Shown: positions 36,658-56,694 of the stretch, piece after piece
Position numbering within the stretch: position 1 is the stretch's first letter
How the letters are laid out: the number at the start of each line of letters is the position of its first letter
Source: Obrimoposthia wandeli
Taxonomy: Eukaryota
Assembly (NCBI GenBank): GCA_977020255.1
Contig: CDROCS010000998.1
Coordinates: forward strand, 1-64,000
Direction of reading: 5' to 3'
DNA length: 64,000 nt
The notes under the pieces: model-generated
The model's database searches: none
What the model was told of the DNA's origin: nothing
The model's input: only the letters and a program-made list of their open reading frames with translations
Translations under genes and position numbers: made by a program

Positions 36658-37044
36658 CTATTTGATTCCCAACCACACCCACACACCGTCACTCTCTACT
36701 TGGGTGATCACCCCAGCTTTAGGACGCGCATTGGTGTTACTGCTGATGGACAAGCTGCCGTCATCAACAAAGAAGGCATCTGAACCCACATCGGCATTAT
36801 CAATATCACCGCTGTTCAAAAACTTATGCTCACCAACATCGACACCAATACGGGTTTCACCATCAAAACCTGTGGTGTTGTCTACACCGAGGTTTGACAC
36901 ACCAGCACAGATGTCGGCAGGCGCGGCACTGGCAAAACCGATGGCTAGCCCTGCTGCCAACATCACCACCGCATTACCGCCAATGTACTGGCCCCCTTTA
37001 ACCGGATAATCTCGGCGGGTGCCCGTTCGTTTTGCTGTTCCCAT
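36658..37044 (-). CDS. Capsid decoration/cement protein
   Basis: 128 aa Gly-rich ORF between scaffold and capsid genes, ends GVWVWLG. Confidence 0.65.
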   Translation of the reverse strand: MGTAKRTGTRRDYPVKGGQYIGGNAVVMLAAGLAIGFASAAPADICAGVSNLGVDNTTGFDGETRIGVDVGEHKFLNSGDIDNADVGSDAFFVDDGSLSISSNTNARPKAGVITQVESDGVWVWLGIK

Positions 37045-37595
37045 TAGCTGTTTTCCTTTTTCGCTGCCAAGAATGCGGTTTTATCAAGATCACATGCCTT
37101 GAGCACTGCCAGCTCTTCAGCTGTTAGATCGTTATCGTTCTTGGTTTTATGGTGGGTTTGCTGGGTTGCCGTTTGTTGCGAAGTAAGAGCAGCAATGGCT
37201 GGGCGCTTTTCAAGCATTGCCGACAACGCAACAACGCCTTGTTGTTCACCAAACTGTTTTAAGTAGTCGGTTTCCGCTTCAACAATCTGGCCTTTGTCTT
37301 TCGCGGCTTTAATCACGGAATCAATACCTGTTGAATCTGTACCCGCTTTTAATACAGCCAGTTCACCGACCACGCCGTTATAGGCATCGATAGTGACAAA
37401 CTGAGTTAGATCGACAGCTTTGCCCTTATCTGCGGTTAATGCTGCCACCTGCGTTTTCAGATTATTGCTTTCGGTCGCCTTGGTTTGCAGGGCATCGAGG
37501 GCTGTTAATGCGGCCTGCCCTTGCTCTTGGGTTAAGGTGTCTTCTGTTGGGGTGATACCTAACTTACCGAGCAGTTTTTTCAGTAGTTCATTCAC
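37044..37595 (-). CDS. Internal-start scaffold protein (Mu gpZ analogue)
   Basis: In-frame GTG at 37595 preceded by GGAGG at 8-nt spacing. Confidence 0.7.
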   Translation of the reverse strand: MNELLKKLLGKLGITPTEDTLTQEQGQAALTALDALQTKATESNNLKTQVAALTADKGKAVDLTQFVTIDAYNGVVGELAVLKAGTDSTGIDSVIKAAKDKGQIVEAETDYLKQFGEQQGVVALSAMLEKRPAIAALTSQQTATQQTHHKTKNDNDLTAEELAVLKACDLDKTAFLAAKKENS

Positions 37596-38222
37596 ATTAC
37601 GATCCTCCGTTTGACCGTATAGATTAATTTCGGTGCCGATACCGGCGGTGTGGGAATTCAATCTGAGATTGAAGTCAGCCGTCTTTTCTGCGTACAGGGC
37701 TGCCAGTGATTCCATGCCGACGACACCGGGATCATTGGTAATAGCCGCCATGCGCAGCAGTAACGGGTGACCGTGTTTGTTGTAGGGGAAAACAGCAGAA
37801 AGAAAGGCGTACTCTTTAGCGTCAATATGGCCTTTAGCGGTATTGGTCCAATCGGGGCGAATATATAAACCCTGCCCTTCACGCCACTCAATATCGACAC
37901 CACTATTCAGCCAGCCGGATGCAATGGCCTTTTGACCATTTTCGGCGGTATTGAGGGTTTGATGTTCGTAATCAATCAGGACTTTGGGGGCTGTGGCTTT
38001 AGTGGCCGCAATCATCTGCGCGGCGATATCGGCATTAAGGTGCCAATAGCCATCGGCGGTATCGTGGGGGCGACCATCACGGGCTTTGAATTTGCCCGCA
38101 GGTAGCAGCTGATGCCAGCCGTCTTCTGACTGGTTTAAGTCTGCTACCAGTACAGCAAGGTTACCGGTAAGGTTGGCAGCTAAAACTGCCTGCGCGATGT
38201 GAGTGCGTTTTGATGTTTTCAT
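37044..38222 (-). CDS. Mu gpI-like prohead protease with C-terminal scaffold
   Basis: QLLPAGKF.ARDGRP, IDYEHQTL, Y.FLSAVF, AAITNDPG motifs. Confidence 0.92.
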   Translation of the reverse strand: MKTSKRTHIAQAVLAANLTGNLAVLVADLNQSEDGWHQLLPAGKFKARDGRPHDTADGYWHLNADIAAQMIAATKATAPKVLIDYEHQTLNTAENGQKAIASGWLNSGVDIEWREGQGLYIRPDWTNTAKGHIDAKEYAFLSAVFPYNKHGHPLLLRMAAITNDPGVVGMESLAALYAEKTADFNLRLNSHTAGIGTEINLYGQTEDRNVNELLKKLLGKLGITPTEDTLTQEQGQAALTALDALQTKATESNNLKTQVAALTADKGKAVDLTQFVTIDAYNGVVGELAVLKAGTDSTGIDSVIKAAKDKGQIVEAETDYLKQFGEQQGVVALSAMLEKRPAIAALTSQQTATQQTHHKTKNDNDLTAEELAVLKACDLDKTAFLAAKKENS

Positions 38223-38280
38223 AGCGCCAGTGTGGCGCTATTTGGCTAGGAGGCGTGGTGGAAGAAGTTCGGGAATGTGG
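38222..38280 (-). promoter_or_regulatory. Putative late promoter/leader of the head operon
   Basis: TCCCGAACTTCTTCCA (38259-38274) shared 14/16 with the lysis leader; TAGCGCCA-N3-TGGCGCTA hairpin overlapping the ATG. Confidence 0.55.
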
Positions 38281-38539
38281 ATTGGCTTGAGATTGAACAG
38301 AAGTGAGTGAGTTAGTTTTTTTTGCTCTATTTTTAGGTTTCGGATAAGGTTTCATATTGCAAATGTTGAATTTGCGCGAGTAAACGCTATAAATATGACC
38401 TAATTCACGAGGCTACTACAGTACAGTACTACGAAGCGTTGGGGCTGAAACCTGATCTTGGTATTTGACCTTATTGAGTAAAGACAGCAAAAGAATTTAA
38501 TTGTTATACTCTATAATGGCTCCAGAATAATGGTGATTT

Positions 38540-39298
38540 ATGATGGTAGATGGAAACAACGAAAGATTATTAGAGCCTGAAATCAAATCATTGCTACTTA
38601 ACCATTTGGTTATGAAAGGGATATTAACATCTGCCGATACGGTTTTTAACGAATTTACAGTTGATAACGCTTCTCGTAGGGTTGATCTAGCTATCTCTAA
38701 AGGGAAAGAGTTGTGGGCATTTGAAATTAAAAGTGAAGCCGATACTCTGACTAGACTAAAAGGACAAGTAAACATCTATTCAAAGTACTTTGACAAAGTA
38801 TTTGTAGTGGTTGCAAAAAAGCATGTTGACTCAGCATTGTCCATAATTCCTACTTCAGTAGCTCTTTGGGAAATAAAACAAAACAGAATAGTAGTGAAGC
38901 AAAAAGGGAGAAAAAAACTAATTAAAAACTCTGAAAGTTTCATTGATATGATGAGTGTCTCTGATTTAACTAAAATCGTGAGTAAAAGTGGCCTAAAATC
39001 CCCATCTAAAAGAAGACAAGATTTAGTCAGTTCTTTAGCTAAAGTAAATAGTAATTTATTGAGAGAAGCTGCTTTTGAAGCCATCACGCAAAAATATAGG
39101 CTATCTTCGAAGATGTTCTTTGATCAAGTCATGAATAGGGATATTACTCCTAATGATATTTCTTTATTAAGTCGATTCAAATTACAGGACTTACGCTCAC
39201 TTATCCCCACAGACGATATTGAGGATATTATATGTACCCTTAATGCTATAGGCATTGATGGCGATAGGATACAGTGCAATGATTTAAGTTGCGTATAG
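38540..39298 (+). CDS. sce7726-family PD-(D/E)xK-like protein
   Basis: RRVDLAI...AFEIKSEADTLTRL..Q...Y..YFD.V.VV motif. Confidence 0.8.
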   Translation: MMVDGNNERLLEPEIKSLLLNHLVMKGILTSADTVFNEFTVDNASRRVDLAISKGKELWAFEIKSEADTLTRLKGQVNIYSKYFDKVFVVVAKKHVDSALSIIPTSVALWEIKQNRIVVKQKGRKKLIKNSESFIDMMSVSDLTKIVSKSGLKSPSKRRQDLVSSLAKVNSNLLREAAFEAITQKYRLSSKMFFDQVMNRDITPNDISLLSRFKLQDLRSLIPTDDIEDIICTLNAIGIDGDRIQCNDLSCV

Positions 39299-39312
39299 AC
39301 ATATAGACACAA

Positions 39313-40446
39313 CTAATCTACCCAATCTTCATCTGTATCGAGGTCTTCCAGAATATCACTGTAATGAAGCTGCTGGTACAGGTGTAAGTTGATTCTTACA
39401 GCTGTTGCCCGATTTGGAGACGTAATGCCATATTCGTCACCTTCTGAAGTCCTCTCTATCATTTGAACTCCCCAAAGTTGTAGACCTTCAATCCAGTAAT
39501 CGCTAATGATCATTTCAGATGCAGCTTCTTGGTAAAGTTCTTCTTTTTCTCCTAGAGCAATGTTTTTGGGGTCATCAAATTCCTTTCTTATAAAACGCCA
39601 ATCGTTTTTTAGTGAATAATCAATGCGAGGAGGCGGAGTTGACCCACCACCACTAAGTTTAGCCGCTCTAGCACCACCGCGATCTGAATATAGCATCGCT
39701 ATATCCGATGAACAGTTTTTAAATGTACTATTGAAAAGCAGTCTTTCATATATCGGAATTTCTCCACGATATGAACCTGCAAAACTAAAAGGAAAAGATG
39801 CAGCGGATATTGAAAAAACTGCTTGAGGAAAGAGTCGGTGCAGACTTTCGACTAGTTTCGCATGTTTTTCACCTTCTAGAGTATCAATTTTTCCCACATC
39901 TTCATGATCAAATATAAATAGAAGCTGATTTATGCTTTTACCTAGTAATGATCTGGCTACGGTATTAAATAGCACTGCCGAACTTTTCTTCATCATAAAT
40001 CGAACGACTAGCCCACGATTTAGAGAGACTAAAGACACAATTTGCTTATCCAATTCACTTAAATTATCAAGCTGTAATGTTGGTATAGCGTTGGGAGTGC
40101 TTTGAATATAATTAAACCAGTTTTCGTACCCATTATTTGGGTTAAGAAGGTTATGAATTTCTTCATGAACGGCTCTTGGATATTCTTGTGTTGCAATATA
40201 CTTTTTGTTTTTAAATAGAAAGTCACTATCAATATCAGCAATAAAATGTCTTTCGCCAATTGATTTCTGAATTCTTTCTATAGAGCTTTTCAGGTAACGA
40301 GCTGTTGTCCACCCTTTTAATGGGAACATCGGCAGTATCTTATCTTTGTCTTTTTCTGGCAACTGCTCGATTGCTGTCATTTCCGAAGGATTTAACGCCA
40401 GTATCGGGGCATATTGAAAAAGTAATGCTTGCTCTGATATAAACAA
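39313..40446 (-). CDS. Beta-family protein (related to satellite P4 beta / sce7725)
   Basis: N-terminal YAPIL...E..AI..L, PRIDY, C-terminal W.....S.......RINLHL; probable TTG start at 40446 after a GAGGT RBS. Confidence 0.7.
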   Translation of the reverse strand: MFISEQALLFQYAPILALNPSEMTAIEQLPEKDKDKILPMFPLKGWTTARYLKSSIERIQKSIGERHFIADIDSDFLFKNKKYIATQEYPRAVHEEIHNLLNPNNGYENWFNYIQSTPNAIPTLQLDNLSELDKQIVSLVSLNRGLVVRFMMKKSSAVLFNTVARSLLGKSINQLLFIFDHEDVGKIDTLEGEKHAKLVESLHRLFPQAVFSISAASFPFSFAGSYRGEIPIYERLLFNSTFKNCSSDIAMLYSDRGGARAAKLSGGGSTPPPRIDYSLKNDWRFIRKEFDDPKNIALGEKEELYQEAASEMIISDYWIEGLQLWGVQMIERTSEGDEYGITSPNRATAVRINLHLYQQLHYSDILEDLDTDEDWVD

Positions 40447-40447
40447 A

Positions 40448-40948
40448 TTAACCTCTATAATTATCAAGTTGATATTTCAAAGAAGTTAGAGACACGTCAA
40501 AATCTAGTGCAAGCTGTTCATACAAAGCTTCACCTTTGAGTGTATTTTCACTATCTCTTTTATGTTTAGCTAATAAGTGCATAGGCATTAGAATATCAGC
40601 AGCTAAGTTATTTGCTTCGGTTTCTATAGTTGAGGGAAGCTTGGAACGAAATAGTGCATCATCAATAATGCCATCACCAATATATTTCCTATGTAGAAGA
40701 AAATGGGCTATCTCATGAGCTAAAGTAAATCGTTGGCGGTGTTTAACATCATGTCTATTAACACGTATTAATACGACTCCATTCGACTCTTTTATTTCAC
40801 CCGAAATATTACCTTGTAATGTTGATGATTTAACTATCAACCCAAAAGCCTTGGCTAAAGTGCCAACCTTGATTGGGAAGCTATTTTGATGTGCTTTTAT
40901 GATTGAAATTTGTTCATGGGATAGTTTACTCCACTCTCTTGAAATCAT
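40448..40948 (-). CDS. ImmA/IrrE-family Zn metallopeptidase (no HTH)
   Basis: RFTLAHEIAHFLLH (HExxH) and ETEANNLAADILMP. Confidence 0.9.
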   Translation of the reverse strand: MISREWSKLSHEQISIIKAHQNSFPIKVGTLAKAFGLIVKSSTLQGNISGEIKESNGVVLIRVNRHDVKHRQRFTLAHEIAHFLLHRKYIGDGIIDDALFRSKLPSTIETEANNLAADILMPMHLLAKHKRDSENTLKGEALYEQLALDFDVSLTSLKYQLDNYRG

Positions 40949-41721
40949 TTTATATCCCCATCTTTCTGTACGCTTTCGTCCGTATCACCAAGCTGATCCC
41001 AGTCGATATCTTCATCTAATTCGGCCCAGTCTATGCTCTTGCTTCCATTTTTATTTCTAAGAATAAAGGCATCAACAACATCCTCTAAATGCTTAGTGAA
41101 TTTACCTTCGTCAATAAGCTCTTCCAATTTATTTTTTACTACACTATCAATTTTCTGTTCTGTCGTTTCTCCTGCGACTTTTTCTGCAATAGTTTCAGCA
41201 GTAGATTCGGTCGTTTGCTTTATGTTTCGATAGCCCCAAAAAGAAAGTACGGCTATAGCAATACCGAGAGCGGTTATGATAACTGATACGGAAGTAATCG
41301 ATATCGCTGCAAAATCAGCGTAGGAAAAGTAGTTTTGATGTTGATATAAGTTATCAACTCTTTGTTTTAGTTTGGGTAAGTTATTAGGTAACTCTGTACG
41401 ATTTTGAGTAACTATTGAACTTTTTAATATTGCTTCATTAATTGCACTAGAGCTTTTTAATATTTCTTTATGAAGCTTTTGGTAATCGTCTCTGATTTCA
41501 TTGTCGATTATCTCGTTGGAAGCTTGAGATAACTGGACAGTGGCATTGGCTAGAGTATCAAGAGATTGTGATATAGAAAGCAAAGATTCGAGAACCGCCT
41601 TGTTATGTTCTTTATCAATATTGGTTGTTGTAGGAGGGGATTCGATAGCATTAAGTTCTGCTGCAACGAGAGGAAATGAACATACCCAAATGATAATGGC
41701 TTTAATAACAAAGTGCATCAC
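40945..41721 (-). CDS. Hypothetical membrane protein (signal peptide, coiled coil, one TM, acidic tail)
   Basis: Hydrophobic N-terminus; TM segment AAISITSVSVIITALGIAIAVLSFWGY; ATGA overlap with the peptidase gene. Confidence 0.7.
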   Translation of the reverse strand: MMHFVIKAIIIWVCSFPLVAAELNAIESPPTTTNIDKEHNKAVLESLLSISQSLDTLANATVQLSQASNEIIDNEIRDDYQKLHKEILKSSSAINEAILKSSIVTQNRTELPNNLPKLKQRVDNLYQHQNYFSYADFAAISITSVSVIITALGIAIAVLSFWGYRNIKQTTESTAETIAEKVAGETTEQKIDSVVKNKLEELIDEGKFTKHLEDVVDAFILRNKNGSKSIDWAELDEDIDWDQLGDTDESVQKDGDIK

Positions 41722-41868
41722 TACTAGTTCCAGACTCTAAATATCAAGATTTGGACCAATAATACTACAACTATCGCTACGGTTATCATATCACTCTTTG
41801 ATTTTGATGAAATTTATTTTTTATTGATGAGGAGCTTGAAGACTAATACATAATAATAAAACTGATTA

Positions 41869-42030
41869 AATCGCTTGGTTTGAGATGTAAGGGCTTTAGT
41901 CAGCGACTAGTACAGCAAGGTTACAGGTAAGATTGGCAGCTAAAACTGCCTGAGTGACTTGAGTGCGTTTTGATGTTTTCATAGCGCCAGTGTGGCGCTA
42001 TTTGGCTAGGGGGCGTTCGGGGATGTGGAG
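41869..42030 (-). repeat. Chimeric duplicate: gene I leader + first 28 codons fused to gene G stop + 3' flank
   Basis: 41896-42030 matches 38136-38280; 41869-41904 matches 46214-46249; mini-ORF MKTSKRTQVTQAVLAANLTCNLAVLVAD* at 41896-41982. Confidence 0.92.
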
Positions 42031-42318
42031 GATTTGGTTCGGAACTGCTTGGTGTGAGTCAGCAATGATCTCATTGACTCATTTTTGGACAAAATCGTGT
42101 CAGTGATATTGCTAATTTAGCTATTAATGAATTAGTTCAAGTATAGAAAGGACTCCCTTATATGAAGCCCGACTGCAGCTTATCCGTACATAACACTCAA
42201 GGTAGCAACTACATCAAAGTAATTAAAGCCTCAGGTAACGTCTTAATTTTGTGATGATATCAACTTCAGTTGTTGATTCTGCTGATATCATATTGCAACG
42301 ACTAGGCTGATATAAAAG

Positions 42319-43182
42319 ATGAGTATGGCAATAGACCCAGTATATAAGTTCATGAGTGGGGAGTGCTTCCATCTCAAAGGCTTACGAGAAAACACTGTGT
42401 GGTTTTCTAGCGTTAAAGATTTAAATGATCCCTATGAAGGGCGTGTGAGTCTAAAACATAATGATGTATCACTAATTGACAGAAAACTAGCCCTAACTCA
42501 TGTTTTTGACGAGGAAAATAAAGACCTAAAGAAATCTCGTAAGGAAGTTGAATCATTCCTAAAAAGAGTAGGTATGGATAAATTCAATGAGCATGTAGAA
42601 AAAAACACGAAGAGGCACTTTGAGGATTTTTTAACGTTTCACCATGAGCAACGTCACGTGCTCTCGTTATCTCGAGCGAGTGAGCTATTAAACGAAAACC
42701 CTATACCAAAGCCTCTTAGTCTAATGATGATGTGGGGGCATTATGCCAACGGCTTTAGAGGTATGTGTGTTGAGTATGACTATCACGAGCTAGTCAGAAG
42801 TATCAATGTATTAAACAATATCGCAGTATCTGCTAAGACGGTTGATTATGTTGAAGGAACTCTCCCAATAATAGAAACTAAAACTATCCTTGATGACATA
42901 GTTTATAAAAACGGGAACACTTCGAGAGAAATACTCAGAGCTTACTGTACCAAGCACAAGGCTTGGGATTATGAAAATGAAGTCAGGGTTATTAGTCCGC
43001 TTCACGGAGTTAACAGACATAGTGAAAAGAGTATTAACAGAGTCTTTGTTTCAGACCAAAACCCTGCATTAATAAAAAAGGTCAAGAGCATCCTTAAAAC
43101 CAAAAAACAAAAACCTGAGTTACTGAAAGTTTCATTACATAAGAAAGAGTTTGGCTTCTACTTTAAGACCATTGAATACTAA
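42319..43182 (+). CDS. DUF2971-family protein
   Basis: WFSS...LNDPYEG, MWGHYA....GMCVEYD, K...WDYENEVR motifs. Confidence 0.8.
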   Translation: MSMAIDPVYKFMSGECFHLKGLRENTVWFSSVKDLNDPYEGRVSLKHNDVSLIDRKLALTHVFDEENKDLKKSRKEVESFLKRVGMDKFNEHVEKNTKRHFEDFLTFHHEQRHVLSLSRASELLNENPIPKPLSLMMMWGHYANGFRGMCVEYDYHELVRSINVLNNIAVSAKTVDYVEGTLPIIETKTILDDIVYKNGNTSREILRAYCTKHKAWDYENEVRVISPLHGVNRHSEKSINRVFVSDQNPALIKKVKSILKTKKQKPELLKVSLHKKEFGFYFKTIEY

Positions 43183-43514
43183 AGGAAGAACTGATTTTTC
43201 TCGAGTCTGTAGATACGTTACAGGCATGAAAAAAATTAATCAAATGATGATTTAGTGAAATGGGGCTTAAACAGCCGCGAACTTGATGTTTTGGGGCACT
43301 TCCATGTCAGCAGGGATCGCGCTGAAACGTATCTGGACAAAAACAATTTGGGTACATTGATCTTACCGATTTCAATCAGATTAGAGAAAGTACCTTGAAT
43401 CCTAAAACATTCGTTGGCTGCGTTCTAATTTGATGAGAGATACAAAGAAATGACTAACGATAAACCAAAATCTTGTGATTAAGGTTTGAAAAGCTGACAA
43501 CTATTTAAGTGGAA

Positions 43515-43766
43515 TTAAACTAATAAACTTAGGTAGAAGCCTAAAGAGCTTTCGCCCTCTAAACTTAACCCTGCACCTACACCAGTAGCTACGACACCTG
43601 CACAAACCGCACTCACCCCATTTAATAATGAAGCCAATAGTACTCTTACGTTTTGCATCACTCTTTCCATAAAGCCACCTTTTATTCCCATTGTCGTTAC
43701 GTTCAATAAACTAGCGAAGTAGTTACATACAATAATTATCAATGTGAGAGCGGTTATTATGTCCAC
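43515..43766 (-). CDS. Small hydrophobic hypothetical protein
   Basis: ORF track only; start uncertain. Confidence 0.3.
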   Translation of the reverse strand: MDIITALTLIIIVCNYFASLLNVTTMGIKGGFMERVMQNVRVLLASLLNGVSAVCAGVVATGVGAGLSLEGESSLGFYLSLLV

Positions 43767-43767
43767 A

Positions 43768-43796
43768 GTGCCGAGCTGAAGAATCGAACTCCAGAC
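43768..43796 (-). other. tRNA 3'-half relic (att-like)
   Basis: GTC-TGGAG-TTCGATT-CTTCA-GCTCGGC-AC: T stem/loop, acceptor 3' strand and discriminator; no 5' half. Confidence 0.6.
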
Positions 43797-43855
43797 TTCT
43801 GCCTAAATTTACTTACACCAAAACAATAACTTAAAAATCAATCATTCGCAATAGT

Positions 43856-43979
43856 AGTTAACGCCTTGTAAGGGGGAGCAACACAATACCGAGGTTGTAC
43901 AACCACCTTAAACACTTAGCCCGCCGCATAATAACAACGCCACGCGTTGTGAATCACTTTTGGACAAAATGTGTCATGG
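43856..43979 (+). repeat. Degenerate Vibrionaceae integron attC site
   Basis: 124-bp imperfect palindrome TAACGCCTTG.AAGGGG.GAGCAAC...ACCACCTTAAACACT...CGCATA...GCCACGCGTTG.GAATCAC...GTCATG, close to Vibrio superintegron repeats as I know them; R' GTT changed to GTC. Confidence 0.7.
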
Positions 43980-44024
43980 ATTTTGCTAATTTATAAATAA
44001 CTACAGGTATGGCAAATCGTGTAG

Positions 44025-44053
44025 TTGGTGCTTACAACCTTACATTGTAGAAT
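44025..44053 (+). promoter_or_regulatory. Putative sigma70 promoter for the ATPase-HNH pair
   Basis: TTGGTG-17 nt-TAGAAT. Confidence 0.4.
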
Positions 44054-44071
44054 ATCAATCAGGCTCATAAT

Positions 44072-45313
44072 TTGGTTAAAGGCATGATCGAATCAATAGA
44101 CTTCAAATTGATTGGCACTAGCGATAAGCGTGTTAGCACGACGTTAAGTGGCAAAAACCTGATAATCACAGGTGAAAACGGCTGCGGCAAAACTCGCTTC
44201 CTGCGTCAATTGCACCAATACCTACAACAATTCTTCAATAGGCAAATACAGCCTAGGGAAGTAATTCAACAACAACTAGAGAGTACTCGACGGGCGTTAG
44301 AACAGGCTAGCGTATCTCATAGAAACTATAATTCGTACGCTCAAAATATTAAGTCGTATGAACAGCAGCTAGAGCGTCTATCTAACGAAAATATGGTGTT
44401 CAGCGGTCCTGATGCTCTGTTCGAATTGGTTAACAACAAGCAATTCATCCTTCGATTTTTCGAAGCAAATCGACTTGCCAGCAACATTGCTAGTAACGGT
44501 CAGATTGAAAGCATATCTAATATCAAAAATACTGCTCAGTCCCAAAACTTCGAACAAGATTCAAGTAATCAGTTCGAAAAATATCTAGTCAGTTATTACA
44601 ACTACGGTTCGCATGTAATTGCTCGTGAAAATAATCCTGAGAAAGAGCAACAAATCAACGCATGGTTCGAGAAAGTACAAAATGACTTACGTGACCTGTT
44701 TGAAGATCATGAATTAATCCTTCAATACAACCCAGAAGAACAAGCCTTCTACATTCACCAAGAAGGCAAAGATCCATATCGTTTTAGCACATTGTCTTCT
44801 GGCTATAGTTCGATTCTAAGCATTTATGCTGATTTGCTTATGACAGTTGAGTTGCGTGACATACCAGCGGAAGACATCACTGGTTTCGTTTTAATTGATG
44901 AAATTGATGCGCATCTGCATGTATCAATTCAAAGAAAAATCTTCTCGTTCTTTGACAAGGCTTTCCCAAAGATTCAATTCATCATAACTACGCATTCACC
45001 TTTCGTAGTTCAATCAGTGAATAATTCGATAATCTATGACCTGAGTAAACTTGAACCACTAAAAGATCTTTCTATGTACTCATATGAGTCCATCCTAAAA
45101 GGGTTACTAGGTGTTGAAAGCACATCCGATATATTAAACGCTCAACTGGATGAAATGGCTGAAATCATTAACCAAGATCCAGTAAACACAGAGCGATTAA
45201 AGAAATTAATCGACTCAATAGAGCCGCATGAAGAGCAGTTAAACGCTCGTTCACGTGCATTCCTTTTACTTGGCAAGAATGCTCTTTTAGATTCAACCGA
45301 TGGTGAGGGGTAA
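44072..45313 (+). CDS. ABC/AAA ATPase, PtuA (Septu)-like
   Basis: GENGCGKT (Walker A), LSSGY signature, VLIDEIDAHLH (Walker B/D-loop), TTHSPF. Confidence 0.85.
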   Translation: MVKGMIESIDFKLIGTSDKRVSTTLSGKNLIITGENGCGKTRFLRQLHQYLQQFFNRQIQPREVIQQQLESTRRALEQASVSHRNYNSYAQNIKSYEQQLERLSNENMVFSGPDALFELVNNKQFILRFFEANRLASNIASNGQIESISNIKNTAQSQNFEQDSSNQFEKYLVSYYNYGSHVIARENNPEKEQQINAWFEKVQNDLRDLFEDHELILQYNPEEQAFYIHQEGKDPYRFSTLSSGYSSILSIYADLLMTVELRDIPAEDITGFVLIDEIDAHLHVSIQRKIFSFFDKAFPKIQFIITTHSPFVVQSVNNSIIYDLSKLEPLKDLSMYSYESILKGLLGVESTSDILNAQLDEMAEIINQDPVNTERLKKLIDSIEPHEEQLNARSRAFLLLGKNALLDSTDGEG

Positions 45314-45317
45314 TTAA

Positions 45318-45983
45318 ATGTTCAATGTTGTTCGAACATACCCTGAACCCCCAAGCATCGCTAAGAACGAGTACAACAAAGAGGACGTGCTCAAGAAACT
45401 CAGACCGATGTTCTTCGATAAGTGCTACCTATGTGAACGAGATGATATTCAAGATGTAGAAGTAGAGCACTTCATCCCACACAAAAAAGATACAGTACTG
45501 AAATACAATTGGGAGAACCTGTATTACTCATGTTCTCGATGCAATAGCATCAAAAGTAGTACACACATTAATCTATTAGATTGTGCTAATCGTTTCTACG
45601 ATGTTAGTGCAATGATTAAGTGCTTGATGCCTTCTACGCCTGATGGAGACGTTCAAGTTTCGGCAACTAGTGCAAACCCATGCACTCAAACAGAAAATAC
45701 TGTGACGTTGCTTGAGGCTTGCTACAACTTAGATAACACGGCTCTTCGAGGTATCAGTCGTGAAACTCTGATGGAGCAAACGTGGGATCATTACACGGAA
45801 TTACTTAATGCGAGGCAGGTACTTCGTAATAAGCGAACAGGACGCACAGATAAACAAAAGGCAGAAGAAACATTTGAAGCAATGCTTGATGTAAAATTTC
45901 CATTTTCTATCTTTTGGCGGTATTACTACCTGAACGATTCTTTTCTTATACGGAATTACCCTCAATTAAGAGTTGGGTTTTAA
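45318..45983 (+). CDS. HNH endonuclease, PtuB (Septu)-like
   Basis: CYLCE...EVEHFIPH...WENLYYSCSRCNSIK; 4 nt after the ATPase stop. Confidence 0.85.
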   Translation: MFNVVRTYPEPPSIAKNEYNKEDVLKKLRPMFFDKCYLCERDDIQDVEVEHFIPHKKDTVLKYNWENLYYSCSRCNSIKSSTHINLLDCANRFYDVSAMIKCLMPSTPDGDVQVSATSANPCTQTENTVTLLEACYNLDNTALRGISRETLMEQTWDHYTELLNARQVLRNKRTGRTDKQKAEETFEAMLDVKFPFSIFWRYYYLNDSFLIRNYPQLRVGF

Positions 45984-45985
45984 AC

Positions 45986-46012
45986 AAAGGAGTCAATATT
46001 GGCTCCTTTTTT
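45986..46012 (+). terminator. Intrinsic terminator after HNH gene
   Basis: AAAGGAGTC-AATATT-GGCTCCTTTTTT. Confidence 0.7.
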
Positions 46013-46240
46013 ATCCATTCGGGTAACTTTTAGTAAGGCTAGTACACACTAACAGAATGTAAATGAGTAAAAGCACTAGATAGCTTCGAGGCAGGAACGT
46101 GTCAGACAGGATTCACTGACACACCCCTAACCCCACATTGGTACACGCCGTTTAAACCTTTCCCAAAACGTTTAACCCTTTCCCGCCCACACGGTTGCAC
46201 CAGAAATTAATTCAATCGCTTGGTTTGAGATATAGGGGCT

Positions 46241-46699
46241 TTAGTCTGCGGTAAGAAAGTTACCCATGATCTGATAAATTTTATCTGTATCTGCATCTGA
46301 AACACCTAACCATGGCCTTGCGGGTATGGCGGCGAGGTGCGGTAACATATCTTCTTTGCCACCGTAGTGATGGATTGCGCCGTATTCTAGCGGGGTGCCG
46401 AAGCTGAGCCCTTGACCGTCATTCCAGTAGTTGAGACTTTGGCGCAGGTGGTTGTTTAGTACCAGAATGAGATCGCTGTCGGCGGGCTTGCTGCGCTGGT
46501 AGTCTGGACTGAGAGGTTGCCATGACTCCCCTTCTGGCGACTGTTGCAACCGCCAACGTTGTTGATGGACGGTTAACAGGTAGTCGCCGATTTGCTGATA
46601 CAGCGGCTGGAGGCTTTCTGTTTTTTTTATTATGGCGTTCAGTTTGCGCCGAGGCGACTGCATGGCTGGCAAGGTGATGGCAAACGTTGAATTGCTCAT
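46241..46699 (-). CDS. Mu gpG-like virion morphogenesis protein
   Basis: QQSPEGESWQPLS, YGAIHHYGG, IPARPWLGVS motifs. Confidence 0.92.
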   Translation of the reverse strand: MSNSTFAITLPAMQSPRRKLNAIIKKTESLQPLYQQIGDYLLTVHQQRWRLQQSPEGESWQPLSPDYQRSKPADSDLILVLNNHLRQSLNYWNDGQGLSFGTPLEYGAIHHYGGKEDMLPHLAAIPARPWLGVSDADTDKIYQIMGNFLTAD

Positions 46700-52307: not shown

Positions 52308-53150
52308 TTACTTGACGAACTTAAGAAGGTCAGAAAAACTTTTCGCTATAAAACACGGTTTCGTGTCATTCAAAGCAAGTTTTAACTCTTCTTCTCTCTT
52401 CACATCTTCATCAGTCCAGTGAGTTATTGAAACCAGTAACTTCCAAAAATCGGGATTATGCTGCTTACCATACTCAGCCCAAACAGAAGTAACTCCAGCA
52501 GTATTTGCCATGGCAATGTCTTTTACAATCGAATCACCAATGTAAACCGCATCGCTCATATGAACACCTTCCTTTTCACAAATCTGTTTCAACAAATGAG
52601 GATTAGGTTTTCGATCACTTTCATCAAGAAGTTGAAGGTATTCACCTTGTTCATTTAACCAATTGAGGGATCTTTCATCTAGCTCATGATGAAACCTGTC
52701 CCTTGGTGCGTATAAATGTGTAAAGAAGTCTTTAAGCCCCAACTTTTCAAGCCTGTAAAGAGCATTTCTAACTGGCGCTTCCGTATGCGCTACTAACTTA
52801 ACATCTTTAGATTTCAGAGCGTTCAAAGTATCAATAACACCGTCATAACACTTTAAACTATCTAAACGGGCTCTATTAAATGCATGAAACGCTGAATCAA
52901 TTTTTCCCTTGATCAATTCATCACTAGACGTTTCAAAATATTCAATTAAAGATGGAAGCTCCAATACCGCCCAAGGATGTTCAGCATTACCATGCTTCTG
53001 ATGAACGGACTTAAAATCTGCTAATAATTTATCACGAGAAATTCCCGTGATACATATCAGTTCTTCCAGCATTGCAGTGAAGGAAATTGAGTAATAACTG
53101 ATCCAATCGTATAGCGTATTGTCTAAGTCTGTAATTATTAATTTCTTCAT
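52308..53150 (-). CDS. HAD-superfamily phosphatase
   Basis: TDLDNTLYD (DxDxT), RKPNP, IGDSIVKD. Confidence 0.88.
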   Translation of the reverse strand: MKKLIITDLDNTLYDWISYYSISFTAMLEELICITGISRDKLLADFKSVHQKHGNAEHPWAVLELPSLIEYFETSSDELIKGKIDSAFHAFNRARLDSLKCYDGVIDTLNALKSKDVKLVAHTEAPVRNALYRLEKLGLKDFFTHLYAPRDRFHHELDERSLNWLNEQGEYLQLLDESDRKPNPHLLKQICEKEGVHMSDAVYIGDSIVKDIAMANTAGVTSVWAEYGKQHNPDFWKLLVSITHWTDEDVKREEELKLALNDTKPCFIAKSFSDLLKFVK

Positions 53151-53152
53151 AA

Positions 53153-54796
53153 TCAATCCAGTATAAACTCAATGGGTTCTGCCATTTTTATCCAGCTGTT
53201 ATTCTTAATTTCATGGAATTGGATTTTAATATACTCACCCGTAAAATCTAATTCTGCCATTTGATTAGGATGTCCCTCTACTCGATGACCATCACTAACA
53301 CCTGTACTACCAAGCCCTACAATCCAAATGGATTTCATCTCATTATCCACGGCTTGACTCAACTTCATTACACTTCTTTCATGGGTATGCCCATGAAGTA
53401 CAGCATCCACTTTATTTTTAATGCACCAATCAATAGTAGCTTGAGCATCATAAACAACGCTTCCCTGCATTCCATACGTTGGCTTTCTAGCATACTCAAC
53501 AGGAATAAGATTATGGTGCAAAACTACAATCCGGATTGCACCAAAAGCTTTTTCTTTTGACCAACCAAGCCTCTTCCGAGCATCATTTCTTTGATCTTGC
53601 CCGATAAAACCTTGCCCCTGGAATAGATACTTATACTGTTCTACAGTGTTCGTATTTAAGAAGCAAATATCGACTGGACGCTGATTATTAATCAGATATT
53701 TTCGCCCCATTGAAAGATATTCATTAGCTTTTGCTGATGTAATTGCTTTAAAATGGTTTTCGTAAGCACTTTTGTTGATTTGACTTGTTTCAGCCATCTT
53801 AATAGATAGCTTATCTTCCGGTGTTAAATCAACGCCCTTCTTTCCTTGCTGAATCGAATGCAATTTATCAATCGCAGTTAAAAGATCTTGAGGTAATTCC
53901 TCAGAAAACATAACATCATGATTTCCAGGGCAGAATCCAATTTTAGACTTATCAAGCCCAACCTTTGAGCCTAGAAACGAGTAAAAGTCTTCAACTTGCT
54001 TGAATTCACTAGTACTACTTTTCCATGTCATATCACCGGAAACGATCAAGGACTGAAGTTCACCTTCAAACTTTTCAGCGACAAGCTCTTTCAACTGCGT
54101 TGCGGTTTTTTTATCATTAAATTGATGGAAATCTTCCACATCCGAAAAGTGTAGATCTGTAACCCAATGAATTTTTGAACCACTCAATTTAGTATAGTTT
54201 GATGAAAAATCCTCCGGAGTAGCTACATTCGCATTAATGAGCAAGATTTCTTTAGTTGATTGTCCTTTTTCATACTCTTTCACGAACCAAACAGTTCTAT
54301 CCTGATGCTGTAACTCATCCAAGCTGGATACTTGCTTATTACGGAAATCTTCAAAAAATTCCGTCTTGTCTGCAAACAGACCAAAGTCACTATCACAGTA
54401 GCTAAACTGATGTAACTCAGCTTCAACATCAGCGCCATCAACTTTATTAATATCCTTAAATCTGAACCACGTTTTAAAACCACGTGACTCTCTGTAATAT
54501 TCAGGACATGCATCTGGTGTTGGGCATGCTTCTCCAGCTTCCCCTCTGGCGATAAATGTATCTAAAAGCTCAGCTTTGTATAATTGTTTTGTCCCTGTAT
54601 CGAAAAGATAGACAAATTCAAATTCGACTTCTTTTTCAAGCATTTTACGGAAAATACTTGGAATTCTTTCATGAGGTTTCGCCCACCAGCCCCAATAAAC
54701 ATATTCTTGTAATTGACTAATCTCTTGATGTTTTTTTATTGTGTCTCCCTCAGGGGTGACCAAATCTCTAAATCGTAAAATGATTGCTTTTGCCAT
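53153..54796 (-). CDS. Calcineurin-like metallophosphoesterase with ~210-aa N-terminal domain
   Basis: TDLHF, SGDM, PGNHD, LHHN, HGHTH: all five metal-binding motifs. Confidence 0.88.
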   Translation of the reverse strand: MAKAIILRFRDLVTPEGDTIKKHQEISQLQEYVYWGWWAKPHERIPSIFRKMLEKEVEFEFVYLFDTGTKQLYKAELLDTFIARGEAGEACPTPDACPEYYRESRGFKTWFRFKDINKVDGADVEAELHQFSYCDSDFGLFADKTEFFEDFRNKQVSSLDELQHQDRTVWFVKEYEKGQSTKEILLINANVATPEDFSSNYTKLSGSKIHWVTDLHFSDVEDFHQFNDKKTATQLKELVAEKFEGELQSLIVSGDMTWKSSTSEFKQVEDFYSFLGSKVGLDKSKIGFCPGNHDVMFSEELPQDLLTAIDKLHSIQQGKKGVDLTPEDKLSIKMAETSQINKSAYENHFKAITSAKANEYLSMGRKYLINNQRPVDICFLNTNTVEQYKYLFQGQGFIGQDQRNDARKRLGWSKEKAFGAIRIVVLHHNLIPVEYARKPTYGMQGSVVYDAQATIDWCIKNKVDAVLHGHTHERSVMKLSQAVDNEMKSIWIVGLGSTGVSDGHRVEGHPNQMAELDFTGEYIKIQFHEIKNNSWIKMAEPIEFILD

Positions 54797-54948
54797 AATC
54801 CAGAACCTACCGTTATTGTTTTGACGGAATTCTAGCAAGTCTTATTTTTTATGTCTTTGAATATATTAAATATACATTTCACATAAGAATTACAGCATTG
54901 TGATAAAGTTCTCATTCAAGCTCGTATTTATAAAGTAGTACTAATTAT

Positions 54949-55650: not shown

Positions 55651-56694
55651 TTACGAGTGTTCTTCTTTATTTGTTAATAACTTTGTTCTGCTATGCTCCA
55701 GCAACTTGTCTTTAAATAAATCACCAACATCGTGTACTTGATCATTAATCTCAATTGTTGGCTGATCACCTAACAACAAGTCAAGTTGGCGTGCTATTTT
55801 CTTCGTTGCAGAGTTTAACTGGTCGTTAATTTCGGTAGTGTTATAACCATTTTTTTCAAGCTGCTCTGAGATTTTCAAGAGATCATTTACCGCAGTAACA
55901 GAGCTTGGTAATTGTTTCAACTGTCCCGTTTCAGTAAAGCTCTCAAGATAATAAGCAGATGCTGAGTTGAGGATCGTCGTCAACACTGTTGCTGTCAAAG
56001 CATGCCCAGCAACCTTAACCCATAAGCTACCATTTTCGATATGCTCAATAACTATTGGATTATCCGTTATTGATACATCAAACAAATGGCATATTTCAAG
56101 GTATATGGCATCAATCGCTTCTAATTTCAGACCAAAAGCCTTCAGAGTGCTTACGTTAGATAAATAGAGCTCTAATTGAGTCAATTCACCACTATCAGCT
56201 TTGCTCTCAGCATTTGAAAGCAGTAAGTCGATTGAGAAAACTAGGTTTTCTACATTGCTTGCAAGATTTTCCGAAGCAAATGACAATCGATATAGCATCT
56301 CTGGTTGGAAGTTAGTACGGTAATTTTCATATACGTCTAAGAAAGCCTCTAAATTTACCAAAAATTTATTCAAGATAACGTATATCGTTTGATTAGCATC
56401 TATCTGATTTAAAAACTCTCTAATAGAATCTTCGATTTCATAACAGTTAACAATTAGCTTACGGTAAGTGACCTTGCTTTTTTCCTTAGCAATAGCTTGA
56501 GTAACTATATTTGTTATTTGGTTACGTTGAATTTGTCCATTCTGGGTCTCACCAAACGTCTGGTAGCTAATTGATTGAACAGCCTTTGCTGTAGCACTCA
56601 GATCTGCACATATACCTAAAAGACTATTAAACCTTTCTCCCTGCAACTCTTTCTTCAAACTCTTAAGGGATCTATAAAACGCTCTCTTATTCAC
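55651..56694 (-). CDS. Hypothetical AT-rich cargo protein (347 aa)
   Basis: GTG start with GAGGT RBS; no family recognised. Confidence 0.7.
   Translation of the reverse strand: MNKRAFYRSLKSLKKELQGERFNSLLGICADLSATAKAVQSISYQTFGETQNGQIQRNQITNIVTQAIAKEKSKVTYRKLIVNCYEIEDSIREFLNQIDANQTIYVILNKFLVNLEAFLDVYENYRTNFQPEMLYRLSFASENLASNVENLVFSIDLLLSNAESKADSGELTQLELYLSNVSTLKAFGLKLEAIDAIYLEICHLFDVSITDNPIVIEHIENGSLWVKVAGHALTATVLTTILNSASAYYLESFTETGQLKQLPSSVTAVNDLLKISEQLEKNGYNTTEINDQLNSATKKIARQLDLLLGDQPTIEINDQVHDVGDLFKDKLLEHSRTKLLTNKEEHS

What the first reader, a model, noticed from the sequence alone, without database searches (positions are those of the whole stretch)
38300..41860. Candidate four-gene system: membrane protein - ImmA/IrrE peptidase - beta protein operon facing a sce7726 nuclease
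Seen: three tightly coupled minus-strand genes (ATGA overlap; 1-nt gap) converge on a PD-(D/E)xK-like gene with a 14-bp gap, all AT-rich and bounded by phage G/I sequence. Established: P4 beta neutralises the Gop toxin in the gop-beta-cII anti-phage locus; ImmA/IrrE/CapP peptidases are stress or ssDNA-activated switches; RosmerTA pairs this peptidase family with membrane-acting toxins. Inference: an anti-phage or abortive-infection module in which the peptidase senses or restrains, the membrane protein and/or nuclease kills, and beta acts as antitoxin. I do not recognise this exact combination as a named system.
Basis: partly seen in the sequence, partly recalled or inferred. Interest (0 to 1): 0.75.

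Follow-up and report, generated by a model that had tools for sequence, protein, structure and literature searches.

The report
Peptidase-bearing variant of gop-beta-cII defence
The four genes are a real, intact and widely conserved mobile cassette: a relative of the phage-satellite P4 gop-beta-cII anti-phage system in which the Gop toxin is replaced by an unrelated two-pass membrane protein plus a small zinc peptidase, here parked in a cargo hotspot of a Mu-like prophage; its function is inferred, not tested.

Summary
Observation confirmed. The genes and junctions are as described: an ATGA overlap, a 1-nt gap and a 14-nt convergent gap, at 34-38% GC against about 50% in the flanks.

Beta is a P4 beta homologue (27% identity; Pfam 1.3e-53). 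The layout, effector then beta facing a convergent cII, is that of P4 gop-beta-cII, a validated defence system.

Two things differ from P4:
- Gop is replaced by a non-homologous two-transmembrane (2TM) protein.
- A 166-aa M78 (ImmA/IrrE/CapP-type) peptidase sits between that protein and beta.

The four-gene order recurs in 44 of 52 genomes retrieved with beta alone. The other eight are contig-cut or decayed. Flanks are unrelated, cassette GC is lower than the flanks, and the four genes co-diverge (r 0.79-0.88).

An October 2026 preprint on "TIM-B systems" already sketches this architecture by comparative genomics. No experiment exists for this variant.

The cassette lies in the G-I gap of a Mu-like prophage. 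In related phages that gap is empty or carries other defence genes. In the window it is stacked next to a PDC-S31 + Septu cassette across a chimeric I'::'G scar.

Verdict: new variant of a known kind, of moderate interest.

The parts
38257..38539 (+). Cassette edge and upstream region of the cII-like gene. Similarity to the I-upstream copy ends at 38256. A weak sigma-70-like site lies at 38481-38510.
   Evidence: Repeat D1 ends at 38256. The promoter-like match is not above shuffle expectation.
38540..39298 (+). cII-like / sce7726-family protein, 252 aa. It has an N-terminal PD-(D/E)xK restriction-endonuclease-like domain (D49, E62-x-K64) and a helical C-terminal domain. It is convergent with beta.
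   Evidence: PADLOC 'cll' 1.7e-49. NCBIfam sce7726_fam 4e-37. 35% identity to P4 cII, E 4e-31. Catalytic residues invariant in 54/54. AF2 pLDDT 92.3. Foldseek hits 3dnx, PaqCI, AF1548, XisH and SfsA.
39299..39312 (.). 14-nt spacer between the convergent stop codons of cII and beta. No terminator-like site.
   Evidence: In 44 relatives the stop-to-stop distance has a median of -4 nt, and 25 of them overlap.
39313..40446 (-). Beta (Pfam Beta_protein, 'TIM-B'), 377 aa. Predicted (beta/alpha)-barrel with many invariant polar residues and a conserved acidic C-terminal tail containing Trp.
   Evidence: Pfam 1.3e-53. PADLOC beta 2.1e-39. 27% identity to P4 beta over 97% of its length. AF2 pLDDT 87.5. 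Foldseek finds only generic TIM barrels, TM <= 0.40. Tail motif present in 45/45.
40448..40948 (-). M78 (ImmA/IrrE/CapP-type) zinc metallopeptidase, 166 aa. Peptidase domain only, with no HTH and no C-terminal sensor domain.
   Evidence: Pfam Peptidase_M78 1.3e-14. PADLOC capP 1.3e-26, covering profile positions 10-146 of 242. PDB IrrE 8slm/3dte and CapP 7t5t. H78, E79, H82 and E109 invariant in 53/53.
40945..41718 (-). Two-transmembrane protein, 257 aa. Hydrophobic N-terminal helix (about 4-22), variable loop of about 110 aa, conserved second TM (about 139-157) and a conserved C-terminal tail of about 90 aa. It occupies the position of Gop in P4.
   Evidence: Hydropathy and family conservation. 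Only 11 close clusters. An iterated HMM finds one homologue directly upstream of M78 in nearly every locus. No similarity to Gop.
41719..41858 (-). AT-rich upstream region of the three-gene operon. The promoter is not identified.
41859..42016 (-). Chimeric scar. It holds a copy of the I gene start (34 nt upstream plus the first 28 codons, 90% identical to 38132-38256). This is joined, at a short microhomology, to a copy of the G 3' end and its downstream sequence (87% identical to 46204-46250). It separates this cassette from the PDC-S31 + Septu cassette.

Best explanation
**What it is**
The region is a self-contained, horizontally mobile four-gene cassette of the gop-beta-cII / 'TIM-B' class of anti-phage systems. 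It is carried as cargo in the G-I hotspot of a Mu-like prophage.

**Shown**
- Beta and cII are true homologues of the P4 proteins, in the P4 layout.
- The Gop slot holds an unrelated 2TM protein.
- A catalytically intact, sensor-less M78 peptidase is translationally coupled between that protein and beta.
- cII is a PD-(D/E)xK nuclease-fold protein whose 3' end abuts or overlaps that of beta.
- The four genes travel and diverge together.

**Inferred mechanism (steps not shown)**
1. In uninfected cells the barrel protein beta keeps the module silent, as P4 beta does for Gop. It may do so enzymatically.
2. A phage-derived cue lifts this restraint.
3. The peptidase has no sensor domain of its own, so it probably depends on a partner. 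It then acts as a proteolytic switch on a cassette partner. Candidates are the cytoplasmic tail of the 2TM protein and the conserved acidic tail of beta.
4. The 2TM protein damages the membrane and aborts the infection.
5. The convergent cII nuclease is a second or back-up effector. Its expression is set against the operon by head-on or overlapping transcription.
For: **Homology and layout**
-.
- P4 gop-beta-cII protects against lambda and P1, and Gop is toxic without beta (PMC9122126).
- A phage accessory gene triggers it to cause cell death (10.1101/2023.04.06.535777).

**Recurrence**
- All contexts of membrane-protein homologues show the same four genes.
- So do contexts of more distant beta homologues.
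- 44 of 52 loci retrieved by beta alone are complete.
- cII relatives at 29-30% identity still face a beta gene; the one locus with enough flank also shows M78 and a small upstream gene.

**Unit behaviour**
- Pairwise identities of the four genes correlate at r 0.79-0.88.
- Flanks are distinct in 38 of 40 (upstream) and 35 of 40 (downstream) loci.
- Cassette GC is below flank GC in 43 of 44 loci.

**Intact active sites and folds**
-.

**Defence context**
- PDC-S31 and Septu PtuA (4.8e-143) lie next door.
- The same G-I gap in relatives carries Dsr1 or a kinase/phosphatase pair, or is empty.

**Precedents**
- Peptidase plus beta in PD-lambda-2 (PMC9519451).
- The architecture is sketched in 10.64898/2026.10.19.760177.
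Against: - No experiment exists on this variant. The defence role rests on homology and location.
- Gop itself is absent and the 2TM protein is not detectably related to it (hhalign probability below 1.5%). The 'effector' role is therefore assigned by position and topology only.
- In PD-lambda-2 the peptidase-bearing protein, not the expected toxin, was toxic, and beta was not needed to neutralise it. Roles may differ here too.
- No substrate of the peptidase is identified.
- The specific link of beta to deazaguanine transglycosylases claimed in the preprint did not stand out in my Foldseek searches.
- No convincing promoter or terminator was found.
Confidence: 0.6

Rival explanations
1. The peptidase is the toxic or executive component, as PD-lambda-2B is. 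The 2TM protein anchors or restrains it rather than killing, and beta is required for sensing rather than for neutralisation.
For: - PD-lambda-2B (HTH-M78) is toxic alone and rescued by its upstream partner. The beta-like PD-lambda-2C is needed only for defence (PMC9519451).
- M78 is the most conserved of the four genes (mean pairwise identity 50%).
- Its catalytic residues are invariant.
- The genes are tightly coupled, and rare single-ORF forms occur with beta (P0046) or with the 2TM gene (L059).
Against: - The window peptidase lacks the HTH part of PD-lambda-2B and matches it only over the peptidase domain (1.1e-7).
- The upstream partner is a 2TM protein, not HigB-like.
- In P4, where there is no peptidase, the small 2TM protein Gop in the same position is the toxic component.
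Confidence: 0.13
2. The cII nuclease is the main killer, and the three-gene operon is its regulator or sensor. The 2TM protein would be a membrane-located sensor.
For: - The PD-(D/E)xK core is invariant and the fold is nuclease-like.
- cII and the 2TM protein are the fastest-diverging genes (29% and 23% mean identity), as expected of parts that meet phage factors.
- The 3' ends are always convergent and often overlapping.
Against: - In P4 the toxicity maps to gop and its relief to beta.
- cII has its own promoter side and opposite orientation. This fits an alternative or back-up arm better than a regulated downstream effector (preprint view).
Confidence: 0.1
3. The cassette is an addiction (toxin-antitoxin-like) module that only stabilises the mobile elements carrying it and has no role against phages.
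For: - Gop and beta behave as a toxin-antitoxin pair.
- The cassette is found next to integrases and in islands.
- It has low GC and patchy distribution.
Against: - The P4 relative does protect against lambda and P1.
- The window copy shares a hotspot with Septu and PDC-S31. Relatives carry Dsr1 or a kinase pair at the same site.
- Many copies lie in chromosomal islands beside RM, HipA and Mrr-type genes.
Confidence: 0.12
4. The peptidase is an ImmA-type anti-repressor that belongs to the prophage's own lysis-lysogeny control, and the neighbouring genes are unrelated morons.
For: ImmA/IrrE-family membership. The location is inside a prophage.
Against: - No HTH repressor gene is adjacent.
- The same four genes occur together outside prophages in unrelated chromosomal sites.
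- The cassette lies among late morphogenesis genes, far from the Mu-type early region at about 57-63 kb.
Confidence: 0.03

Closest known systems
P4 gop-beta-cII (Rst_gop_beta_cll; Rousset et al. 2022, PMC9122126)
   Same: Beta and cII are homologous (27% and 35% identity). The layout is identical: a small 2TM gene, then beta on the same strand, with cII convergent at the 3' end. The system is carried as cargo of a mobile element. One relative (Enterobacter kobei, L011) even sits next to a P4-type integrase, as in P4.
   Different: Gop is absent. The first gene belongs to an unrelated 2TM family with a longer, variable loop. An M78 peptidase gene is inserted between it and beta. The beta subfamily has its own conserved acidic, Trp-containing C-terminal tail. 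Among the 52 species genomes retrieved, this type occurs in Gamma- and Alphaproteobacteria. All named Gop-family hits were from Enterobacterales and Aeromonas.
'TIM-B systems' (bioRxiv 10.64898/2026.10.19.760177, Oct 2026; comparative genomics only)
   Same: The preprint describes Beta_protein as a TIM barrel coupled to varied effectors, including a second 2TM family distinct from Gop. It describes a metallopeptidase gene often lying between effector and TIM-B, and a convergent REase in P4-type versions. This is the window's architecture.
   Different: I could not see their figure or lists, so identity of the window's 2TM family with their '2TM-B' is presumed, not checked. Their proposed specific kinship of TIM-B with deazaguanine transglycosylases did not stand out in my structure searches. 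The prophage G-I location is not part of their description.
PD-lambda-2 (Vassallo et al. 2022, PMC9519451)
   Same: It pairs an M78 peptidase gene directly with a beta-like gene, it is a validated abortive-infection defence, and its three genes lie on one strand.
   Different: Its first gene is HigB-like, not a membrane protein. Its peptidase is fused to an Xre HTH. No cII nuclease is described. Similarity to the window proteins is weak (1.1e-7 over the peptidase domain; 3.2e-6 over the first 50 residues of beta).
CapH/CapP, ImmR/ImmA, DdrO/IrrE and RosmerTA (RmrA) peptidase switches
   Same: Same peptidase family (capP 1.3e-26; RmrA about 1e-10; IrrE in PDB 3.6e-6). They give a precedent for proteolytic de-repression on a stress or phage cue.
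   Different: There is no HTH substrate or HTH fusion, no CBASS genes and no RmrT. The window peptidase is the bare catalytic domain.

Membership tests
gop-beta-cII (P4 type) | Beta protein (PF14350) homologue | tested here: met
   Pfam 1.3e-53 over the full profile. PADLOC beta 2.1e-39. tblastn to P4 beta: 27% identity over 97% of length, E 1e-19.
gop-beta-cII (P4 type) | cII (sce7726 / PF26915) homologue | tested here: met
   PADLOC cll 1.7e-49. 35% identity to P4 cII, E 4e-31. NCBIfam sce7726_fam 4e-37. Neighbours in relatives carry PF26915.
gop-beta-cII (P4 type) | Gop homologue | tested here: not met
   No PADLOC gop hit. BLASTP of Gop against both upstream proteins found nothing. HMM and profile-profile comparison of the 2TM family against the Gop family gave probability below 1.5%.
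gop-beta-cII (P4 type) | Layout: small membrane gene then beta on one strand, with cII convergent at the 3' end | tested here: met
   P4 annotation compared with window.
gop-beta-cII (P4 type) | First gene toxic, neutralised by beta; protection against phage | not testable with these tools
   Known only for P4.
TIM-B systems with 2TM-B and metallopeptidase (preprint) | TIM-B domain with TIM-barrel fold | tested here: met
   AF2 model pLDDT 87.5 with alternating strand/helix pattern. Foldseek hits are TIM-barrel enzymes.
TIM-B systems with 2TM-B and metallopeptidase (preprint) | Specific relation of the barrel to deazaguanine transglycosylases | tested here: inconclusive
   No such enzyme in the PDB top 50. 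A phage queuine tRNA-ribosyltransferase appears only at rank 45 in BFVD, E 0.048.
TIM-B systems with 2TM-B and metallopeptidase (preprint) | 2TM effector distinct from Gop, upstream on the same strand | tested here: met
   Two hydrophobic helices in the window protein and in most relatives. Identity with the preprint's '2TM-B' family could not be checked.
TIM-B systems with 2TM-B and metallopeptidase (preprint) | Metallopeptidase gene between effector and TIM-B; convergent REase | tested here: met
PD-lambda-2 | HigB-like first component | tested here: not met
   The first gene is a 2TM protein with no HigB or PD-Lambda-2_A hit.
PD-lambda-2 | Xre-HTH fused to the M78 peptidase | tested here: not met
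   The 166-aa protein matches PD-Lambda-2_B only at profile positions 283-380 of 402. No HTH domain.
CapH/CapP or ImmR/ImmA | Adjacent HTH repressor that the peptidase cleaves | tested here: not met
   No HTH gene in the cassette, in the window or in relatives.
RosmerTA | RmrA (HTH + M78, about 380 aa) with RmrT toxin | tested here: not met
   RmrA models match only the peptidase part. No RmrT hit.

The most novel reading that the evidence does not exclude
The four-gene form may be the ancestral and most widespread version of gop-beta-cII, with the P4 three-gene form a reduced derivative. It would work as a three-tier switch. An enzymatic TIM-barrel protein (beta) holds a sensor-less protease in check, possibly through beta's conserved acidic, Trp-containing C-terminal tail. 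Once released, the protease processes a 2TM protein into a membrane-damaging form. A convergently encoded nuclease serves as an alternative arm. The I'::'G scar would further show that Mu-like phages build multi-system defence islands by unequal recombination between genomes carrying different cargo at the same site.
Probability: 0.2. Interest if true: 0.65.

Novelty: new variant of a known kind. Interest (0 to 1): 0.45.

Why it matters
- gop-beta-cII is a validated defence system whose mechanism is unknown.
- The variant found here appears more widespread than the P4 prototype. It was found in 52 species-level genomes of Gamma- and Alphaproteobacteria with a narrow two-pattern scan, and many further protein clusters exist.
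- It adds a protease with an intact active site. That gives a concrete handle on how beta controls its effector.
- It links gop-beta-cII with PD-lambda-2 through the shared peptidase-beta pair.
- The PADLOC models recognise only two of the three named parts and have no model for the 2TM protein, so such loci are probably under-counted in defence censuses.
- Separately, the G-I gap of Mu-like phages is known as the anti-CRISPR locus in Pseudomonas phages. Here it is shown carrying defence systems, stacked in tandem.

Tried and rejected
- **Gop homology.** BLASTP, HMM and two hhalign modes compared the 2TM protein and its family with Gop and the Gop family. All were negative.
- **PDB sequence search with the beta profile.** No hit at E <= 1.
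- **Foldseek of the beta model.** Only generic TIM barrels came back. The transglycosylase link was neither confirmed nor excluded.
- **Promoter and terminator scans.** Counts were at or below shuffle expectation, so no regulatory claim is made.
- **Local Pfam copy.** It lacks PF26915, so cII gave only a sub-threshold MmcB-like hit there. The family was established by other routes.
- **Host identification.** The window's proteins are not on record and megablast to phage records gave only a 76% terminase match to Vibrio phages. The host is unknown. It is probably a marine gammaproteobacterium, judged from the best protein hits (Shewanella, Oceanisphaera, Vibrio).
- **ImmA-type prophage regulator reading.** Rejected on distribution and the lack of an HTH partner.
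- **Shared acidic-Trp tail.** The idea that both the 2TM protein and beta carry one was checked. It is conserved only in beta (45/45 against 6/45).


Full report
**1. What is in the sequence**

Between 38.5 and 41.7 kb there are four intact genes:
- a 252-aa protein on the plus strand (38540-39298);
- beta on the minus strand (39313-40446, 377 aa);
- a 166-aa M78 peptidase on the minus strand (40448-40948);
- a 257-aa membrane protein on the minus strand (40945-41718).

There is an ATGA stop/start overlap, a single base between the peptidase stop and a TTG start of beta, and 14 nt between the two convergent stops. An alternative TTG for beta would overlap the peptidase gene by 20 nt.

GC drops from about 0.50 to 0.34-0.38. 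No tRNA is present in the window.

**2. What the proteins are**

*Beta*
- It matches Pfam Beta_protein end to end (1.3e-53) and the PADLOC 'beta' model (2.1e-39).
- It has no sequence relative in the PDB.
- Its AF2 model (pLDDT 87.5) is a (beta/alpha)-barrel that resembles other TIM barrels only generically (TM <= 0.40).
- In the viral structure library the best match is an uncharacterised Gordonia phage protein (TM 0.66). A queuine tRNA-ribosyltransferase appears only at rank 45.
- Many polar residues are invariant across 54 relatives, which fits an enzyme.
- The last residues form an acidic tail with a Trp. The tail is conserved in 45 of 45 relatives but disordered in the model.

*The plus-strand protein*
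- It matches the PADLOC 'cll' model (1.7e-49) and NCBIfam sce7726 (4e-37).
- Its model (pLDDT 92.3) has an N-terminal restriction-endonuclease-like domain. The best matches are 3dnx, PaqCI, AF1548, XisH and SfsA. A helical C-terminal domain follows.
- D49 and E62-x-K64 are invariant.
- The family is large: 2413 representatives at E <= 1e-3.

*The peptidase*
- It is of the ImmA/IrrE/CapP type (Pfam 1.3e-14; PADLOC capP 1.3e-26; PDB IrrE and CapP).
- H78, E79, H82 and E109 are invariant.
- It consists of the catalytic domain only.

*The membrane protein*
- It has two hydrophobic helices, a variable loop and a conserved C-terminal tail of about 90 residues.
- It has no Pfam, NCBIfam or PADLOC family.

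**3. Relation to P4**

The P4 record shows gop (133 aa), then beta 2 nt later on the same strand. cII is convergent and ends 27 nt after beta.
- The window's beta is 27% identical to P4 beta over 97% of its length.
- The window's plus-strand protein is 35% identical to P4 cII.
- P4 Gop is a small protein with two N-terminal hydrophobic helices and a hydrophilic tail. That is the same topology as the window's first gene.
- There is no detectable sequence relation between Gop and that gene, nor between Gop and the peptidase.

The cassette is therefore gop-beta-cII with the Gop slot filled by a different 2TM protein plus an added peptidase.

According to the papers read:
- gop-beta-cII protects E. 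coli against lambda and P1, and Gop is toxic without beta (PMC9122126).
- A phage accessory gene triggers it to kill the cell (10.1101/2023.04.06.535777).

**4. Is the four-gene set a unit?**

- Homologues of the membrane protein are rare (11 clusters).
- Every context read has the same four genes in the same order, in unrelated surroundings: Oceanisphaera, Shewanella, Vibrio cidicii and a metagenome.
- Beta relatives at 48-60% identity from the Vibrio harveyi group, Enterobacter kobei and Aeromonas caviae show the same layout, with a different-looking first gene.
- A scan of one genome per species with a beta alignment returned 52 loci from Gamma- and Alphaproteobacteria. ORF calling and iterated HMMs show 44 complete four-gene cassettes.
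- The other eight split in two groups. Four are cut by contig ends (one of these, L038, also has cII in three pieces). Four are decayed: L036 has the peptidase truncated and beta and cII each in two pieces; L047 has the 2TM gene and the peptidase each in two pieces; L059 has cII in two pieces, with the 2TM gene and peptidase read as one ORF; L067 has the 2TM gene, beta and cII each in two pieces.
- The first genes of all these loci form one divergent family. The loop is short in Alphaproteobacteria (proteins of 135-170 aa, the size of Gop) and long in Gammaproteobacteria.
- Pairwise identities of the four genes correlate (r 0.79-0.88). Flanks fall into 38 of 40 and 35 of 40 distinct groups. 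The cassette is lower in GC than its flanks in 43 of 44 loci, with a median difference of -9 points.
- The convergent stops are a median of -4 nt apart and overlap in 25 of 44 loci.
- cII relatives at only 29-30% identity still face a beta gene. Of the two loci read, the 3-kb contig ends inside beta, and the longer one also shows M78 and a small upstream gene.

Caveat: the scan patterns came from window-like betas, so the sample is biased toward this subfamily. It says nothing about how often other beta types occur.

**5. What is already known**

- PD-lambda-2 is a validated system with a HigB-like gene, an HTH-M78 fusion that is toxic on its own, and a beta-like gene needed for defence (PMC9519451).
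- A preprint of 22 Oct 2026 (10.64898/2026.10.19.760177) renames Beta_protein 'TIM-B'. It lists Gop and a second 2TM family among its effectors. It notes that a metallopeptidase gene often lies between effector and TIM-B. It describes the convergent REase of P4-type loci and proposes proteolytic de-repression.
- The window's architecture is therefore already sketched by comparative genomics. No experiment on it was found in the library. The term 'gop-beta-cII' occurs in only two papers from 2023 onward, and the earlier search added only Rousset 2022.

**6. Setting**

- The cassette lies in a Mu-like prophage running from about 22.9 kb to beyond 63.3 kb, between the G gene (46241-46699) and the I protease/scaffold gene (37044-38222).
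- In 12 related phage contigs that hold both genes, the G-I gap varies. It is about 240-260 bp in eight. In the other four it is 952, 1991, 4158 bp (a Ser/Thr kinase plus a PP2C phosphatase) and 4424 bp (Dsr1, present as two ORFs).
- In the window the gap is about 8 kb and holds two blocks. One is this cassette. The other is PDC-S31/DUF2971 (42319-43182) plus Septu PtuA/PtuB (44072-45983).
- The blocks are separated by a scar (41859-42016). There a copy of the I start (34 nt upstream plus 28 codons) runs into a copy of the G 3' end at a short microhomology. This is what unequal recombination would leave between two genomes carrying different cargo at the same site.
- The same G-to-protease/scaffold gap is the anti-CRISPR locus of Pseudomonas Mu-like phages (PMC3993853).
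- Among 50,697 phage records only P4 has a beta homologue. Four plasmid records have one.

**7. How it most likely works**

Shown: homology, layout, intact catalytic motifs, co-inheritance and defence-rich context.

Inferred, by analogy with P4, PD-lambda-2 and the ImmA/IrrE/CapP switches:
1. Beta restrains the module.
2. A phage cue releases that restraint.
3. The sensor-less peptidase transmits the signal by cleavage.
4. The 2TM protein is the membrane effector.
5. cII is an alternative nuclease arm coupled by convergent transcription.

I put 0.6 on the overall statement that this is a defence cassette of this class acting by abortive infection, and much less on any single step. The main rivals are that the peptidase is the executive or toxic part, that cII is the main killer, or that the module is purely an addiction system.

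**8. Verdict**

- It remains an experimentally uncharacterised, widespread variant of that family.
- Rating: new variant of a known kind, interest 0.45.

Noticed in passing
window 38223-46240; L069-L081: The G-I intergenic gap of this Mu-like phage lineage is a cargo hotspot. In relatives it is empty (about 250 bp) or carries a kinase/phosphatase pair, Dsr1 (present as two ORFs) or unknown genes. In the window it holds about 8 kb. It is the same site as the anti-CRISPR locus of Pseudomonas Mu-like phages (PMC3993853).
   Followed up: partly
window 41859-42016: A chimeric I'::'G scar lies between the two cargo blocks, with the crossover at a short microhomology. It suggests that cargo is stacked by unequal recombination between related phage genomes.
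   Followed up: yes
window 42319-45983: The second cargo block holds PDC-S31/DUF2971 (2.7e-32) plus Septu PtuA (4.8e-143) and an HNH PtuB-like gene, all on the plus strand. The PDC-S31 unit is flanked by a direct repeat of about 45 nt (42075-42119 and 43950-43993, 82-90% identical). This block may therefore itself be two stacked insertions.
   Followed up: partly
window 52308-54838: A further AT-rich island (GC about 0.37) lies inside the prophage. It holds a 282-aa protein matching the PADLOC 'Hydrolase' model (1e-63), which overlaps by 4 nt a 561-aa PUA-like + metallophosphatase protein. This may be another defence pair.
   Followed up: partly
window 55651-56694: A third AT-rich island (GC about 0.35-0.39) holds a 347-aa ORF with no Pfam or PADLOC match.
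   Followed up: no
window 39313-39345 (beta C-terminus); 45 relatives: M78-type beta proteins end in a conserved acidic tail containing Trp (T-D-E-D/E-W-x-D), disordered in the model. P4 beta has an acidic tail without Trp. The tail may be a docking or cleavage motif. The coding sequence of this tail is where beta and cII overlap in many relatives.
   Followed up: partly
L011/L012 (Enterobacter kobei): There the four-gene cassette lies directly beside a P4-type integrase, in the position of gop-beta-cII-int in P4. The peptidase-bearing form therefore also rides P4-like elements.
   Followed up: no
P0046; L059: Rare single-ORF forms occur: peptidase + beta (541 aa) and 2TM + peptidase (336 aa). 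They may be true fusions or sequencing or decay artefacts.
   Followed up: no
L036, L038, L047, L059, L067: Decayed copies of the cassette, with one to three genes in pieces. They include one in a Symbiopectobacterium genome.
   Followed up: no
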